A stretch of DNA of 64,000 nt from Aplysia californica (taxonomy: Eukaryota). The stretch is taken from assembly GCF_000002075.1 (NCBI RefSeq), contig NW_004797421.1, forward strand, positions 1,205,735 to 1,269,734, given 5' to 3'. Of the stretch, positions 52,731 through 64,000 are shown piece by piece. Each line of letters opens with the position of its first letter. The first letter of the stretch is position 1. The translations under genes and the position numbers were made by a program. Below the pieces are notes generated by a model. The model was not told the DNA's origin. It searched no databases and worked only from the letters and a program-made list of their open reading frames with translations.

Positions 52731-55700
52731 TTAGTTGAAGGGCCGCGGTCCCGGCCCGGGCCCTCTCATGTTCATGTTCCCCTGGAACGGCATCCCATTC
52801 ATGGGCCTCATGCCCATCCCCATGCCCATCCCACCCCCCATGGGCGGCCCTCGAGGCCCGTGCCCAGGCATGCCCATTCCTCCCATGTTGCCCGGTGGGC
52901 CTCGCATCATGTTGTTGCCCATCATGGGACCGCCGGGCATCATGCCGGGCCGAGGGGGACCTCCCATCATGCCTGGGGACACACAAGAACAAACATGGGA
53001 GCATGAGTTACACAAGTGCTAGAACCATTGCTGGTAACTTTTCAAAGCCACAATACAGACTCTTTTCAGAAGGTCAACATGGGACAAGTATCCCCACCCC
53101 TTCATTTACACTTTTCTGCAGTCAATATTTAAAATATAAAATGAACCTATTTAAAATAGACCTGCAACAATAATGTCAGAAATTTTAAGAAAAGATCTCT
53201 CCGATTAATTTACAGGCTTCATTGTTCTCATTATTATCGGCAAATCCAGCCTTAAAAGTTCACAAACACCTCTTCAGAATCGGCAAGTCCTTGAGGAGCA
53301 ATAATACACAAAAAAAGAGAATATGTATCTTCTGATACAAAAACAGACCTCCGTAGTCTGACCCTCAAAAGCTCATGAAATACGTTTACATACTGGTTGG
53401 CAGCTATGTAAAACCAACCACTGGACAATGCTGCACAGTACCCAAAAACCACAGAGAGTTGACCCAGTCCCAACTACCTTATTGCATAATTCCATCCTTG
53501 GAGCACAAAATAACAATCCTTTAGTTTCAACTAGCTAAAATTTTAAAGTACTTAAACCTTTCCATTTACTTCCAAAGAAAAGTTAGTCCTTATGTAATTA
53601 CTGACAACCTGTTGCTACTGTAAATAATTTTCTTGTCACACAGTCAAATAAAAATGAAAAGCTTCAACACACAAAGATTACTATATTTCAACGATCTAAA
53701 GATGTAGATAAAAATCCATTTCTTACTCTACATTTGTAGTGAACCAAACAAGCTCTCCATTTTCCTATGCATAAAACAAAATAATCTGTTCTATATGTGA
53801 ACATGAATTACTCTTTCCTTTCCTCCAACCAACATATAGTTGAACTATGTGCTGTCTAAAACAGAACTGTCAATATCTTCAAAATTAAACAAGAAAAACT
53901 TTTTTCCAAAGTTGATGGTGAAGTTATGACTGTCAGAAAATATTTATACTTACAGTTACCAAATTCCTAGCAGCTTCGACCTCCCACCAACAAAACACTG
54001 ACAGCGCACCCATGTACGCGCACAAGAAGAAACACATACACACACACACAAAGAGTACTCACCTCCTGGCATCATGTTGGGACCGGGACCTCCCATGCCC
54101 ATACCCATATTCATATTCATGCCCATGCCACCCATGTTCATTGGGCCACCCGTCTGCATGGGAGGGCCCCCTGACTGCATGTGGGGACCCCCAGCCTGCA
54201 TAGGGGGGCCCCCGGCCTGCATAGGGGGTCCTTGTGCCATGGAAGTGTTCACCATCCCTGAGCTGGCAATCATGGACTCCATCAGGTTGCGCTGGTACTT
54301 GGGCAAGTTAGCCCGCAGTTCTTCCTGTAAGGAGACGGCACGCAGGTTACAACGAGGAAAGCCACCTCACTCAAGTCTAAGGGCTCAAACTTAGGGCAGC
54401 TGTATCTCACAGCAGCCTTACTGGACCTTTGCTTAAAACAGGACAAGAAAGCAGTACGATACTAGCTTTCACACCTGTGCACTGACTAGTCACTGGCTAC
54501 CTGTAGGTGAGGCCTACAAACTCAAACCTCTGATAAAACAAATGTCATGAGATATCTGCAATCTATGACAACATGTATAATTCAACATTTCAGTATGTAC
54601 TCCCAGCAGCTTCTTGCGAGAGTGGTGACTTTATGAAACAAACTACTACAGTAAATCCTTTAAAAAAACCTGGATAAAAACAATAATGTAAAATTGACAT
54701 GAGGAGAAGGAAGGCAAGAGGCAGTGAAGAAAAGAGGCATAGAGGTAAGCAAGAGAGCAATATTCATCAGCTGAGAGCAAACACAACACAGAGTTTAACG
54801 TCTCCAGTCCCCCCACAACCATGTCAGTAGAAAAACTTCACTAATAAAAACGCAGTATTGAAAAATGGTGTGAAATGGCATAGGTTTAACACCCCCATTC
54901 AACACTTAGAAACAGTAATGTTTTCATGATACCTTACAAACTCACAAAAGTATGTGTGCATTATAACACGATACAACTTTCTACACAGTCAGGAATTATT
55001 TCCGAGAAGCAAGCCAAGAGAGTAAAACAACTAGTAGGGTACATAAGTTAAATTGTCACATGCATGATCGCGAGTACTTGAGAAATAAGATAAGTCTTAA
55101 GTTGCAAAGTTCTCACTTACATTTTACCGCAGGGAATCCACATGTACTACACACTAAAGAAAGCTCATCCACCAATTTACTGTTTGGGGAAAACAACTAA
55201 TGAAAATCAAAGGTAAGTGATGCACACAGTCAAAATGATCACAGCTCAAATAAACATACACAGGAATCAGTCCAAAAATATAAAGGCAAAGAGTAAGTAA
55301 TTAAGCAATTTTGTAGTGTGTTAAAAATGGGCTTTGTGACAGATGAATTAACCGTGAGATCTACCAAAAAAAAAAAATTGAGAACATGTATGCAAATCAC
55401 AACTACAAAAACAGATATTTAATTTTAATTCTTTAAAAAGCAGCGCGTATGTAGAAATTTCTAGGGATTATCTGCACTCGAAAAGATATTTCTACACTGT
55501 GCTCACATGTATGTGCAGCTCATCCGATAACATTGTACAAAACAAGAAGGCCAGAGAGACGGGAACTAACCTTGGTCAAGGACTAACCTTTAGTTACGTA
55601 ACCTCCAGACGAGGACACAGACAGACGCGACACTAGCCCCGCGGTACTCACCAGCGAAATGTCCTCATCAGGGTGCACTAACTTAGATGTCAAACCTGAG

Positions 55701-58700
55701 GTAGACTCGGGCTTCTTGATGGTCGGGGCGCCCGTGATGGTGGCCGAACCCCCACCACCGGCGCCACTATTGGAGGACACCACCGAGGCCGCCGCGGGGA
55801 ATGTGGGTCGCCCGCCACCCGCGGCCGTGGAGGTGGCAGTGCTAGACTGTTAAAAGAATATGTTTTAGTGTTAGTAAAAGTTTTACAGCACTTGCAACAC
55901 AATAAGGTCATACAAGGGCACAAGACTAGAGGTATCACAAGAGAGTAACAAACACAAAAAAGGAAGAGAGATCAGGACAATAGATGTTTTGGGGGTTTTT
56001 TTAGTAAGAGTTCTACGGCACTTTCAACACAATAAGGCAATATAAGTGCAGAAGATTAGAGGTGTCACAAGAGAGTAACAAACACAAAAAAGAAGGAGGA
56101 GAGACCAGGAAGATAGATGTTTGATCGGAAAGAAAGAGCCAACCATACCAGATCACCTGCCAACCACCCACAAAAGAACATGTGAGGAGGTTGTGATTAG
56201 GCTGTTGTCTATGAAGAGCTAGCAGTAGTCTCGCCTCAACAGAACACAAAAACAAACCTAAAGAGATGTGATTTGAATAAATAGAAGCACATCAATCTGA
56301 AAACAGCCATTTAGTACCCACATAAAGTGAGACAAACTAACAGAAACAACAGAGTAACAGAAAGAAAGACAGGGAGTAGGACCCACCGGCATATCGAATG
56401 TAAAGCATAAGACTCTGTCATAGCTCATCTAATTTTTTTAACATATATTTTTTTAATTCAGCAAGTGACACATAAGACTATGTCTCCTTGTGCGCAACGC
56501 GATGTTCTGTTGTGAGGTGTGTATCCTTATGCGCAATCACATCATGCCAAAATTTTCAGCCACGTGCAACAAAACTGTCTCCTTATGCACGACTCGACGT
56601 TTAGACTCGTGCGACTGGCAATTTACAGAAGAGAGACAGTGGCAAATTTTAATGTCAAGATGGACAAGGAAGTACAAAGTCCGTCAGACGGGAGTTCTAC
56701 AAGCTGCTGACATTTTTATTCCATACAAGGCCAATCCCTTGCAAGTCCTCCTCCTCCTCTTCTTCCTCCTCCTCCTCCTGCTGTCCGTTAAAAATACAAA
56801 ACAACAAGATTAGATTCACAAAACTTACATTGGGTCCAATTAAAGATAAACACACACACACACACACACACACACCACACCACACACGGGGTGTCGACCA
56901 TCACTCTTGGCTAGGTATTTTGACCAATGGTGATGCTCTAAACGTGCTACACCCCCAGTCTGTCGCACGCGACAAGACCCTCGATTGCTACATGGACCCA
57001 TCGCAGGCAACGGTCGCGTGCGACTAAATGTCTAAGCGACGGTTTCTTAAAAATCTTACTTGATTGATTTTAGAGCGGCAATGAAGAGGTCTAATGGTGT
57101 AAGATGTTCCCTCTATTCTGCTGATGCTTGAAGTTGAATATGCTGTGTGCTGTCTCCTCTCTCCACCCCCACCCCTCCCCGTGTTATTCCGCCCCCCACC
57201 CCCCCCCCCCCCCCACAAACTCTTGCTGTTGTCTGCTGTCCCCTACCTGTGCTGCTGCAGGGAAGAGCGGCCTGCTGGCCCCAGGACCCTGAGGTCTGGA
57301 CATGTTCATGGGGTTCATGGGACCCATATTGCCCATGCCCGGCCGCATCTGTTGATTCACCGGTCCCATGTTGCCCGCCATTCTGAGGGAGAAACAAGAC
57401 AATCTCAGTTTAACACACATCTGTGACACACAAGTGTATGACGAATGTACAGTCCAGTTTGTCTAAGACAGCCACCCATTGTCAAGTGGTTTTCTTAGTA
57501 GGATGTCATACACAAGTGTCATTATAATGGTAAAAAAAAATAATTTTAAAGCACAAGGAGGCAAATGGTCATTTGTTCAAGTGATTGTCTTATACAGGTG
57601 GCTGTTCAAGCAGGTTCTGCTGTACTTTCATTTCAGGCAAGAAAAGGTGAGTTCACCTAGACAATGTGATCTGCTATGTGAGTGAGCAAGTACAACATTC
57701 ATTCAGTCCCAATGTAACATTCCTCAAGACACTACAATCAAAAGCAAAGAATTTGTCCCCTTGCAAGACCCCCCCCCCTCCCACCCACTACAAAGGATGA
57801 AAATAATTCTGAACCCTTACAAATTCATCTCAACGACTTATATGCATTGTCAACAAGATTTGTTCCCATCTGCCCTACAATAGCCAAAACACTGTCAGGA
57901 TCCTAAATCATACAAAGGTTATGCCCAGGAAACACTATCAGAACTTTTACCAACCACACAGGGAAAGAAAATATAACACATAATCACAATATCAACAGTT
58001 TGTAGGAAAAAAAATTTTCCATCAGAACTTACCCCATTGGGCCCATCGGACCTGAAAAGGCAAGAAAAAGAGAGAAATTAAGTTTCATTTCATACACTGA
58101 TTCACATACAAATAGTACAAAACAGCAACTTGCTAAACACATCCTTTCCTAATTCAATTACCAATAATTCAGTTACTGAGTGCTCCCAAATTTCAAATCA
58201 CAACAAGATGACAAACAGCATATGTCTTTGATCACCATACACAAAAATTAAAAACTCCTTCGCTTTGAAACCTAGGCTCAAAAGCACAAATTCCTCTTTC
58301 CTTTCAGATGAATACATCCCTCCCCCCCCCTCCCAATCAAAAACAGCAAGATATAGCCTCTTTTACAACAGAAAAATACCGCTTTTGTTACAAAACACAT
58401 AATTAGAGAAAGGGAGGCTAATCATGGTTCCACACCTAAACCACTACACCAGCATTCCCCAGTCACATCCCAAAGCTTAGAAAAAGAAATCTACAAAACT
58501 CAGTCAGCACCAAAGGTGATCGTTACAATCAATATATGTTTTCACTGCAGACCAGAACACTTTTCCACCAGACATCAGATAGAGTAAACACCTAGCAAAT
58601 TTCCCACACACCATGGCACCAGACACAGATCTCACTGTCCTACTGTCACAGAGCACTAGAAGTCTATTCCATCAGACATCACATGCACATCAACCCCCAC

Positions 58701-61700
58701 CCTCTCCTCCTCCATTATGGGGCCGGCCAGGGCTCACATCTCATTATCCTTCTCAACTACAAGTTTATTCAACCCAATATTGAAAAATACAGGAAAAAAA
58801 CTTACCCATTCCCCCCATCATAGGGCCGGGCACAGTCCCCATTCCTCCCTGGGGCATCATGGGATTGGGTACCCCCGCCCCCATGGGACCCATCATGGGA
58901 CCACCGGGCACCATGGGCCTCATGCCCGGAGGAGCAAACGGCATCCCTGGCTGGGCGGTGGCTCCTGGCATGCCGTTCATCATGGGAGCAGCCGCCGATG
59001 GAGGGGGGTTACTGTTGTCGTCAGAGTCACCCTCGTTGGCAATGTCTGCGGCTGAAATACCAACGAACACATTCATCAGAGACAGACATACATGCGTACC
59101 GTAGTGCTCATTACAAAGACAACTGACCAGATACAAACTCGCCGAGGCAAGAAAAATTAGTAACTCTGCCTGACCCCACAGTTAACTAATGCAATATGCA
59201 AGACCAAAAACATAGCATAAAAACCTGTCTGTATAAAAAAAAACCTAAAATGTAATAATCAAGCAAAGATAAAGATAAAATAGTAAATCAAACATTCCAC
59301 CAAATTCAATAAGGCCAGAACAAAGTCACAACCCACTGAGCGACAGTAGTTGTAGAACACATGGAGCTGTGAAAAGACACAATAGACCATTCATTATTCA
59401 GATACCACACTCCAACCTTCTTTTCTTTATTTTATCCCACATTTCAATCAACACACTGAAAAAAGCAGTGCTGCCATTTTTAATCCATTAATACGCAAAG
59501 AGCAGCTAAAATGTTTCTAAGTCAGAGGCAAACTCTGAATGAAAATACTTTCATTCTTTCATGAACGGCATGCAGATGAAGAGTTTTAAAGAAACAACAA
59601 AATCATGTGAATCAAAAAGCAATCAAAAAGACATTTCAACTTACCTTTCTTGCTTTTATTCTTTTCATGAGCTTTGACATCTTCTTCTGGTATTCCTTCC
59701 ATTCCATAGATCTCAATCTCTGTATTACATCGACCTGGTAAACTGTTGGGAACTTTGTCAATCTTTTCCTTGTGAACCTGATCAGAAAATATTAATAACT
59801 GTGAGGAACTTCACCAATCTTACTTTCACTTTCACACTTTCCATTCCAACTAAAATAGTCAAAACATTGAATTACACATTGGCAACACTTAACACAACTT
59901 GAACAGGGAATATCCCATGCTCACAATTTGTTTAGTTCCACTTTTCACTGTGATGCCCTTCAATATATAAATTTAAGCTTGAAAATTCCAAAATTTACAA
60001 GGGCAGAAGAAACTAGTGCCAGCGAATATAGTTAATGTACACGAAAAATTAACACTGGCATACAATTATACAGACATGAAGCAAAACAACAAACCCACTT
60101 CTTAAAACAATCTCTACTCTACGTAAGACAGAAATCAGTCTCCTCTTTATACGTGAAAACATGGACTTGACACAGTTCCATTTAACTACTACTTTTCAAA
60201 ATTGGATGAACATCATATTCCATGACAATTCCTTAAACTTCAACAGCAAAAATGATACGAGACTGCCGCCCGATAATATAGTAAAAATACCATCCAAAGC
60301 ATTTTTTCCAACACAAACAAAATAAATCCCCCCCCCCCCATCCAATAGACATAATCTGTGGCAAAATACAAACCTGCATGCAATGAATTGCTAATCCAGG
60401 TCCTGTGTACAGTTTTTTATAGCAAATGTGACATTTGAAATGTTTTGCCTTTTGGTGCTGAATCAAGATCTTCTCATCATCAAATTCTCTGTTGCAATAC
60501 TTGAAAATGGTCAAGGAGAGTTACCAAAACACTCGAAAATATCTTTCACACAAATTTGTGTAAAAAAATTATTTGCCATTATATCACAACAAAGAAGAGG
60601 CCTAAAGTTAATTGCAAAAATCAAACGAAAGCTCAATATTGACAAGAAAAAAGATAAGAAAACAGGTAATTTTTACCACAAAAAGGACATTAGTTTAGTT
60701 TAGTAACAAGAAAGTGTTTACGGTACCATAACAAATTACATTAGCCCCAAAATTTAAAAGAAACTTTCTTTTCCCACTTTATAACAATCAAGTTACGACT
60801 ATTTTCAAAGTGATGAGTGATGAACCAATTCATTGCTCAAACCAGTGAGATGTCTAGATCACAATCGAAATTCCCCTTACTAACATCATCAACTGCATCG
60901 AAGATTCCTTTCATTCACCATTTTGCCAGTCCTAATCCTCTGATCTATTGATTTCGGTAATGTCAATTACAACGCCTACTACTCTCAATATCAAGTATCA
61001 AACCAACAAACAATAACATCTTGCAAGAAAACACAGCTTGAGCTAATGCTTAGGTAACATTTATCAAGTCATTTCATATCATTTGTTTACGTGATATATG
61101 ATTTCCAAGTGTTATCGCCAGCAATTTAATCGCTGATGATGATAAAGTGGTACTGATGAGATTGAGAGGTTCCTACCAAGCTTGCGTGGTTTGCTTTCGT
61201 GTCAAAAACACAGCAAGCTTCCTATCTTTAACTTACAAAAAAAAAACGTTCAGTGCCAAAAAGAAAACTGAATAATATAAAACTAAAATGCATGTGTTGT
61301 AGTTTTACCAGTTTTCTTATTACCTTTAATTTAACGTTAACTTTTTAACCCCCAAATTATCTTCCACGATTTGATGGAATTTTTTTCAGATCTCGTGAAA
61401 CACATTATAACGGGAGATGACAAAATATTATTAAACAGTTAAAACTGTGTCAAAGTGAAAGAGGAAGTAGTTTTCTAACACTCCCGAGTCAAAAATAAAT
61501 CTTTCCTTTTTAAGAGATTGTAAATTATTAGCTGTAATACTTCATGCACCCTCCTGCAATCTTCAGATGCTGGAACCATCCACTCAGGGACCAGGCGAGT
61601 TTCACTGGATGCTCCCTCCCATCGTCAACTCAGGGAGAATTTAATCTTTAAAGTCTGAAAGCACTAGTTTTCTGTTTCTATTCTTAAAAATTAAAATCTG

Positions 61701-62384
61701 AGTTCGAAACAATTACAAACAATGCCGTCCAAATCCAATTAACTGACATCCGGATGATTCAGTTTCAGTTTTAAGTTTTGGGCAGAAATTCAAACTGAAA
61801 GTGGAAAGATCTCGTCTTGAAGCAAATATGAAAGCAGTCAAAAAAATGAAGAAAACTGACAATTTATGTATGGCATATTTAATTGAAAGGCAACAACAAT
61901 ATAGACATGGCATGGTTCCATGGATCTAGATCTAGAACTAGAACAGAACTACTAGATTCCTAGATCTAGACTAGACAGAGCTTCAAGACTGTCGCTACTC
62001 CGCTACTCCAACTTGTACCCATGCCATTGACCATTCAGTTTTCAGGACCATTGTCACTGATACATTTCAACACTTTTGAAGTTATAGTCTCACAATTTCT
62101 TTCTATCATTTTTAGCCTAGTGATGTTTGAACTTCAGATGGCGACACTCTACGATTCGATACCAATGTTGTGTTATAATGTTCAACCATCGTGACAAGCG
62201 ACTCCCTGTACCTGTACTGTCGTGTTGCCAGTGCCAGTTGATAGCCTGCGCGGGGACGCTGACAATCAACATGTGAGTGTCCCCCCCCACGTAAAAACAA
62301 AATAAAAACAAATACAAAAGCAACGAGTTAGGAAAAAGGATATCAGCACCATGGCTTCATCTGCTTCTTCTTCTTACGTCCCAT
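52731..62384 (-). CDS. ZNF207: BUB3-interacting and GLEBS motif-containing protein ZNF207 (BuGZ)
   Basis: Exons 62384-62344, 60500-60374, 59777-59645, 59051-58806, 58051-58033, 57382-57247, 55846-55652, 54324-54063, 52972-52731. Sequence [40 protein letters not shown]...[20 protein letters not shown] motif [16 protein letters not shown], and M/G/P low-complexity regions. Confidence 0.96.
55863..56171 (-). mobile_element. Tandem dimer of the ~175-bp retroposon
   Basis: Two head-to-tail copies (55863-55990 and 55996-56171) inside one TSD AAAAGAA(T/C)ATGT. Confidence 0.85.
60501..62343 (-). other. U12-type (minor spliceosome) intron 1 of ZNF207 with AT-AA termini
   Basis: 5' end ATATCCTTTT (U12 donor consensus). 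Branch site TCCTTGAC followed by CATTTTCAA|G. The conserved Trp codon is split TG|G. Confidence 0.88.
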
Positions 62385-62500
62385 GGCTGTCTTGTTTTCT
62401 CAAATCACACAGCGTTGTCAGTGCGTAATTTCGACTTTGAGACCAATATGGCGGAGGAGGGCTGTTTCCGTTTGCGACTTGGATGCTACTTGTTCTAAGT
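62385..62500. promoter_or_regulatory. ZNF207 5'UTR / core promoter
   Basis: CpG-rich stretch directly upstream of the ATG, with AATATGGCGG (YY1-like) and TTTCCG motifs. Confidence 0.5.
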
Positions 62501-63221: not shown

Positions 63222-64000
63222 ATTCCTTTACTTACTTTTACCTTTTTCTTCCGCTTGTACCCTGGGGTGTCGCGGGGAGACACAGGTGTCTGTCTGCAGC
63301 AAGTCGTATGGCCTGTAGGAGGGACATCCCATGATCTTTAAGGGTGTCTGCCACAGATTCACTCCATCGTCGCCTTGGTCTTCCTCTGGCTCTCCATCCA
63401 AAATATTTCATGTTGTATCCTCTCAGAGCTGGATGGTTTGAGGGCATCCGCGTGAGGTGTCCGAACCACTTGACCTTTTGTTTTTCAATGTGTGGTAGGA
63501 CTGGTGTTGCTCCCACGGTGTCCCTTATGACTTCATTTTTAATTTTGTCTCTTCTTGTTTTGTTGACCGCTCTTCTTAAGCATTTCATCTCGCATGTGAC
63601 CAGTTTCCTCTCTAGGGCTTTTGTTAGAGTCCATGTCTGGCACTGATATGTGAGCGTTGGAAGGAAAATGGCGTTGATGAGCTTCACCTTGGTGCTCATG
63701 GGGATATTGGAATGTTTCAGGAGAGGGCCCAGTTGGTAGCTGACTGCGTTGGCTCTCTGGCATCTAGTCTCTATCTCTCGATCTAATTTTCCATTTTCTG
63801 TGAAAATGCTGCCCAAGTATTTGAATTCTCTGCTTTGTTTTAGTTGGGATCCATTGATGTTGATATCCACTTTACCTGGTCTCCTGCTAATTGTCATGAC
63901 TTCGGTCTTGCTTATACTGATCTTCATGTCATATTTTTCGCAGCTCGCATTTAGTTGGTTTATATGCTCCTGTAGCTGAGTCTTGTTGTTAATCATTGCC
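63222..64000 (-). mobile_element. RTE-clade non-LTR retrotransposon, 3' end (C-terminal part of the RT ORF)
   Basis: Uninterrupted 252-aa ORF: MKISISKTEVM, FKYLGS, LTYQCQTW, EMKCLRR, WFGHLTRM, RARGRPRRRW. Ends in a short (TAAG)n-like tail; runs off the window edge. Confidence 0.92.

What the first reader, a model, noticed from the sequence alone, without database searches (positions are those of the whole stretch)
60490..62350. ZNF207 intron 1 is a U12 intron that needs AT-AA ends; an AG 1 nt downstream gives a frameshifted 25-aa product
Seen: exon 1 ends ...TGG TGC TG, followed by ATATCCTTTT. The 3' end reads TCCTTGAC-CATTTTCAA|G TAT TGC AAC. Established: ATATCCTT and TCCTTRAC are the U12 donor and branch consensus, and PWCWYC is the conserved ZNF207 zinc-finger start. 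Restoring the Trp codon requires the intron to end in AA, not AC or AG. Splicing to the adjacent AG gives [25 protein letters not shown]. Inference: either a rare AT-AA minor intron, or a one-nucleotide 3' splice-site switch linking minor-spliceosome fidelity to NMD control of a mitotic regulator.
Basis: partly seen in the sequence, partly recalled or inferred. Interest (0 to 1): 0.8.

Follow-up and report, generated by a model that had tools for sequence, protein, structure and literature searches.

The report
Conserved AT-AA minor intron in ZNF207
The first intron of this animal's (probably the sea hare's) ZNF207/BuGZ cell-division gene is removed by the minor spliceosome at unusual AT-AA ends; RNA reads and a distant relative confirm it, but this intron subtype is known and nothing points to a regulatory switch.

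Summary
Intron 1 of the single-copy ZNF207 gene (62343-60501, minus strand, 1843 nt, phase 2) has a U12 donor and branch site that pair with the genome's own U11 and U12 snRNAs, and it ends in AA. RNA shows exactly this joint (4 raw reads in 2 runs, one transcript contig from another study). DNA-like contigs of another sample agree at both ends, so it is no assembly error. A deeply diverged relative also has AT-AA, and a third species has the AA end. Other orthologues end in AG; human and fly are GT-AG. So the intron changed from G-type to A-type in this lineage and was kept. AT-AA is the commonest non-canonical minor-intron subtype in animals (823 introns, 1.1%). The NMD-switch idea is unsupported: exon 2 must start with G (Trp codon), so any AA end has an AG one base later; no AG joint was listed; the 25-aa product is not conserved. 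Read depth was low and NMD would hide that product, so minor slippage is not excluded. The scan noted other U12 introns in this genome, not this one.

The parts
62344..62430 (-). ZNF207 exon 1: 5' UTR from at least 62430, ATG at 62384, 41 coding nt ending in the first two bases of the Trp14 codon
   Evidence: transcript contig of run X18 covers 62344-62430 with no differences; single copy in the genome
62334..62343 (-). U12-type 5' splice site, A-type (ATATCCTTTT); positions +4 to +10 pair with nt 2-8 of the genome's U11 snRNA (6 Watson-Crick pairs, 1 G-U)
60501..62343 (-). Intron 1, 1843 nt, phase 2, AT-AA ends
   Evidence: RNA joint 60500/62344 in runs X21, X22, X18
60510..60517 (-). U12 branch site TCCTTGAC; predicted branch A at 60511, 10 nt before the intron end; pairs with the genome's U12 snRNA with the A bulged
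   Evidence: branch position inferred from the consensus, not mapped
60501..60502 (-). 3' splice site AA (the used site)
   Evidence: RNA joint; no difference in the contigs of run X5
60500..60501 (-). Overlapping AG made by the last intron base and the first exon-2 base; use would shift the frame (25-aa product); no use seen
60374..60500 (-). Exon 2, 127 nt, C2H2 zinc-finger region, 95% identical to a named fish ZNF207 (P0119)
   Evidence: single copy; RNA-covered
59645..59777 (-). Exon 3, 133 nt, after an ordinary GT-AG intron of 596 nt
   Evidence: RNA joint skipping 596 nt
52731..59051 (-). Exons 4-9 (59051-58806, 58051-58033, 57382-57247, 55846-55652, 54324-54063, 52972-52731), all GT-AG introns; GLEBS-like motif across exons 7-8; about 466 aa in all
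   Evidence: model inferred from sequence; only the exon 3-4 joint has RNA support (loose end of X18)

Best explanation
This is the ancient minor (U12-type) intron 1 of ZNF207/BuGZ, constitutively spliced at AT-AA ends. Shown: the intron is removed exactly from 62343 to 60501 and the message stays in frame; its donor and branch site are complementary to the genome's own U11 and U12 snRNAs; AT-AA is shared with a deeply diverged relative. Inferred: U11/U12 recognise the donor and branch site, and the 3' end is set by distance from the branch A plus the contact between the first and last intron bases, where a first A accepts any last base (AT-AN). Inferred history: the ancestor was GT-AG; both terminal G's became A in this lineage, probably through an AT-AG step. 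In that step the intron would have ended AG|G, and the last G then changed to A. The AG one base downstream is a by-product of the obligatory G of the Trp codon.
For: RNA joint with AT..AA ends in 2+2 raw reads and in a contig of depth 82.9 from another study; no other intron-1 joint listed. Second sample agrees at both terminal bases. U11, U12, U4atac over their cut-offs and a CENATAC/CCDC84 match in the genome; pairing. L006/L019 (two haplotypes of one other species; third codon positions 25/42 identical, intron not alignable) are AT-AA; L005 has the AA end. L007 is GT-AG; L008, L009, L013, L014 end in AG. The residue read through from the intron just before YCxR is R (from AG|G) in 110 fragments, K (AA|G) in 1, T in 1. 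Human and fly intron 1 are GT-AG U12 (PMC2831892 Table 2). A 5' A can splice to any 3' base (PMC4176328).
Against: Only 4 raw junction reads, both runs from one study. The AA lies 10 nt from the branch A, one short of the 11-13 nt optimum (PMC3584512), while the AG lies at 11. U6atac was not found (only 45 candidates were scored, so absence is not shown). Dependence on the minor spliceosome was not tested. The orthologous contigs carry no species names, the donor is on the contig for only two other species, and the small tree is weakly supported, so one origin or several is open.
Confidence: 0.88

Rival explanations
1. Regulated switch: the minor spliceosome chooses between AA (full protein) and the AG one base later (frameshift, NMD), tuning BuGZ levels.
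For: The AG lies 11-13 nt from the branch A in all three AA species (11, 12, 13). The stop is 89 nt upstream of the next junction, so it could trigger NMD. U12 3' site choice is known to be error-prone (PMC3584512). AA has been kept over a long divergence.
Against: No AG joint listed. The AG is forced by the Trp codon, so its conservation carries no information. The slip product is 25 aa here and 76 aa in L006. The same review says it is unclear whether alternative U12 3' sites are regulated or errors.
Confidence: 0.06
2. Both terminal A's are edited to inosine in the pre-mRNA, so the spliceosome reads a canonical GT-AG minor intron.
For: Both changes from the ancestor are G to A; editing of AT-AG and GT-AA splice sites is reported in human (PMC4176328 Table 2).
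Against: No duplex stronger than background at either A, in the window or in L006 (10-85% of random intron A's do as well). No inverted repeat covers either base. AT-AA needs no editing to be spliced.
Confidence: 0.02
3. Assembly error or rare allele: the true end is AC or AG.
For: Draft assembly in 4332 pieces.
Against: Contigs of another sample show no difference at 60501 or 62343, and another species has the same ends on both haplotypes.
Confidence: 0.01
4. The A-type ends are kept by selection because they make the intron slower and CENATAC-dependent, so retention (not a shifted 3' site) limits BuGZ output.
For: A-type minor introns, AT-AA included, depend on CENATAC and are spliced less efficiently (PMC8280824); a CCDC84 match exists in this genome. 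This can hold alongside the best explanation.
Against: Almost no intron-retaining reads in the two polyA runs (low depth). Neutral trapping explains persistence equally well, since going back needs two changes.
Confidence: 0.1

Closest known systems
A-type (AT-AN) U12 introns, AT-AA subtype (e.g. human/mouse RASGRP4, FLJ21106; PMC1557818 Tables 2-3; PMC10639083 Table S1)
   Same: AT donor with TCCTT, TCCTTRAC branch site, short distance to the 3' end, AA end.
   Different: Described AT-AA cases are either conserved as AT-AA or alternate with AT-AC or AT-AT between human and mouse. Here the orthologues are GT-AG, so both ends differ.
ZNF207 intron 1 of human and Drosophila (CG17912), a GT-AG U12 intron (PMC2831892 Table 2)
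   Same: First intron of the same gene, U12 type; orthologous loci fetched here show the same position inside the Trp codon.
   Different: Ends are AT-AA, not GT-AG. The vertebrate U12/U2 twintron in ZNF207 (PMC3564746, PMC8329584) was not seen here: no nested joint in the RNA (low depth).
U12 subtype switches between GT-AG and AT-AC (PMC3584512)
   Same: Change of both terminal bases at a conserved intron position; said to be rare because the AT-AG step splices poorly.
   Different: The end point is AT-AA and the likely direction is G-type to A-type; the review names AT-AC to GT-AG.

Membership tests
U12-type (minor) intron | 5' splice site RTATCCTT complementary to U11 | tested here: met
   ATATCCTTTT at 62343; 7 pairs with the genome's U11
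U12-type (minor) intron | Branch site TCCTTRAC complementary to U12 | tested here: met
   60517-60510; pairs with the genome's U12, A bulged
U12-type (minor) intron | Short distance from branch A to the 3' end, no long pyrimidine tract | tested here: met
   10 nt here; 11 and 12 in the other AA species; 10-13 in AG orthologues. One below the 11-13 optimum.
U12-type (minor) intron | Minor spliceosome present in the organism | tested here: met
   U11, U12, U4atac over cut-off; CCDC84; U6atac not found, search not exhaustive
U12-type (minor) intron | Splicing depends on U11/U12/U4atac/U6atac | not testable with these tools
   needs knock-down or oligo block
AT-AA subtype | Transcripts join the exons at AT and AA, with the genomic bases confirmed | tested here: met
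   joint 60500/62344, no slide ambiguity; second sample agrees
Unproductive splicing coupled to NMD (regulatory switch) | The frameshifted isoform is made at a measurable level | tested here: inconclusive
   none listed, but listing needs 3 reads or a contig and only 4 raw junction reads were seen; 0 of 4 allows up to about 53%
Unproductive splicing coupled to NMD (regulatory switch) | Conserved feature beyond what the protein requires | tested here: not met
   AG forced by the Trp codon; stop position differs between AA species
Unproductive splicing coupled to NMD (regulatory switch) | Isoform rises when NMD is blocked and changes with condition | not testable with these tools
   no such data on hand
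ZNF207/BuGZ | N-terminal C2H2 zinc-finger region | tested here: met
   40/42 identical to a named ZNF207; word-search hits named ZNF207
ZNF207/BuGZ | GLEBS motif for Bub3 binding | tested here: inconclusive
   [13 protein letters not shown] seen across exons 7-8; recognised from own knowledge, not scored against a model

The most novel reading that the evidence does not exclude
After the GT-AG to AT-AA change, this lineage uses the AA/AG pair as a one-base switch, or the weaker A-type ends as a CENATAC-sensitive brake, to tie BuGZ dose to minor-spliceosome activity, and this is why AT-AA was kept in deeply diverged species.
Probability: 0.08. Interest if true: 0.55.

Novelty: new member of a known kind. 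Interest (0 to 1): 0.22.

Why it matters
It is a clean, RNA-supported natural example of a minor intron that changed both terminal bases (GT-AG to AT-AA) at a position kept from fly to human. That is useful for studies of subtype switching and as a natural substrate for testing how a first-base A chooses between AA and an AG one base later. It also warns annotators: aligners that force canonical ends would frameshift or truncate this gene. It does not reveal a new mechanism.

Tried and rejected
Assembly error: rejected. A second gene copy or other exon 1 or 2 that bypasses the intron: both exons are single copy. Other 3' ends within 25 nt: none keeps the conserved residues. Nested major intron as in vertebrates: four U2-like donors exist but no RNA joint uses them (low depth). 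Editing rescue: no supporting structure. U6atac search: no hit. Naming the species of the orthologous contigs: no names given. Three look-ups returned no DNA. A third protein search added no further AA-type fragment. Two primary papers (PMC1370826, PMC60238) were not held; their results are cited through PMC4176328 and PMC3584512. The large representative search was not used, since the protein was not in doubt.

Full report
Observation. On the minus strand the ATG is at 62384, exon 1 ends at 62344 after two bases of a Trp codon, and the intron opens ATATCCTTTT. The branch site TCCTTGAC lies at 60517-60510 and the intron closes TTTTCAA at 60501; exon 2 starts with G at 60500. Scanning all 3' ends from 60512 to 60486, only the AA end restores the conserved W-C-W-Y-C-N start. 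The AG one base later gives a 25-aa product. The joint chance of both motifs at these two fixed places is about 1e-8. Exon 2 is 40/42 identical to a named ZNF207, and exons 1 and 2 are single copy in the genome. No tool named the species.

RNA and DNA. One laying of reads gave the joint 60500/62344, skipping 1843 nt with AT..AA ends and no slide ambiguity: 2 reads in each of two polyA runs (one study) and a transcript contig of depth 82.9 from another study, which matches exons 1-3 without a difference. No other intron-1 joint was listed; two further joints inside the intron come from run X5 at a repeat, with 24-letter sides. Contigs of another sample (X5; labelled a possible RNA run, but covering the introns evenly) span both intron ends with no difference at 62343 or 60501. 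The AA is therefore genomic and used. The limit: a joint is listed only with 3 reads or a contig, contigs drop rare forms, and 0 of 4 reads allows an AG share up to about 53%. NMD would further hide that form.

Machinery. U11, U12 and U4atac score over their cut-offs, and a CENATAC/CCDC84 match is present. U6atac was not found, but the search scored only 45 candidates. The donor pairs with the genome's U11 over 7 positions, and the branch site pairs with its U12 with the A at 60511 bulged.

Orthologues. Exons were searched one by one. Many hits are genomic read-throughs, whose residue just before YCxR reports the intron end: R (AG|G) 110 times, K (AA|G) once, T once. Fetched loci: L006 and L019, two haplotypes of one other species, have a 5.1-kb AT-AA intron. 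That species is far from ours at the DNA level (third positions 25/42 identical, intron not alignable) but closest in protein (1 difference in exons 2-3). L005 has the AA end with a full U12 branch site; its donor is off the contig, and its exon 2 protein matches the AG group, so it may be a separate origin or an early branch. L007 is GT-AG; L008, L009, L013 and L014 end in AG. Human and fly are GT-AG U12 at intron 1 (PMC2831892). The simplest history is GT-AG to AT-AA in this lineage. The contigs have no species names and the tree is weak, so the depth and number of origins are not fixed.

Mechanism. Shown: precise, in-frame removal at AT-AA, and complementarity to U11 and U12. From the literature: minor introns are defined by donor and branch site, with an optimum of 11-13 nt to the 3' end (PMC3584512); a first A can splice to any last base, preferring C (PMC4176328); the first and last intron bases contact each other at exon ligation (10.1101/212811). 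Inferred: the first A pairs acceptably with a last A, which lets AA at 10 nt win over AG at 11 nt; AT-AG is described as disfavoured. Inferred route: GT-AG to AT-AG to AT-AA.

The switch idea. Trp has one codon, TGG, and the intron splits it after TG, so exon 2 must begin with G. Any AA end at this position therefore has an AG one base downstream; its presence and its conservation say nothing about regulation. The slip product is not conserved: 25 aa here, 76 aa in L006, and a one-base slip would also give 25 aa in two AG species. No read showed it. I put a regulated switch at about 6%; some stray slippage is likely, as U12 3' choice is error-prone. Editing of both A's back to a GT-AG-like form is known for other splice sites but has no structural support here.

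What is known. AT-AA is the commonest non-canonical ending of minor introns in animals: 823 introns, 1.1% of conserved minor introns (PMC10639083), with named human and mouse cases (PMC1557818), and it is grouped with the CENATAC-dependent A-type (PMC8280824). I found no paper on this intron in this lineage; public intron databases could not be checked. The new part is the instance: a double-end subtype change at an ancient intron, kept in at least two distant species.

Verdict. Real, spliced as predicted, a new member of a known kind. Interest 0.22.

Noticed in passing
L020:100-150 (ENA contig, distant animal): The same ZNF207 exon 2 is preceded by AC, with a TCCTTGAC about 40 nt upstream and a pyrimidine tract between; donor not on the contig. 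Possibly another change of this intron's ends, or a different 3' site.
   Followed up: partly
L005:344-380: AA end in a species whose exon 2 protein matches the AG group, hinting at more than one origin of the AA end or an older origin.
   Followed up: partly
window 63238-63996, minus: 252-aa open frame that looks like the C-terminal part of a LINE (RTE-like) reverse transcriptase, 0.9 kb upstream of the ZNF207 start; recognised by eye only.
   Followed up: no
window 61433-61616: Repeated element inside intron 1: contig depth rises about tenfold and many contigs run on unlike the window.
   Followed up: no
window 58033-58051, minus: 19-nt coding micro-exon (exon 5) in the inferred model, needed to keep the frame; no RNA check.
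   Followed up: no
window 59654, minus: Five reads end in poly(A) plus adapter within the A-rich end of exon 3: internal priming or a short early-polyadenylated form.
   Followed up: no
window 59661: All 8 raw RNA reads show T for C (+ strand) in exon 3, while two contig sets match the assembly: most likely an allele of the sampled animals.
   Followed up: no
   Followed up: partly
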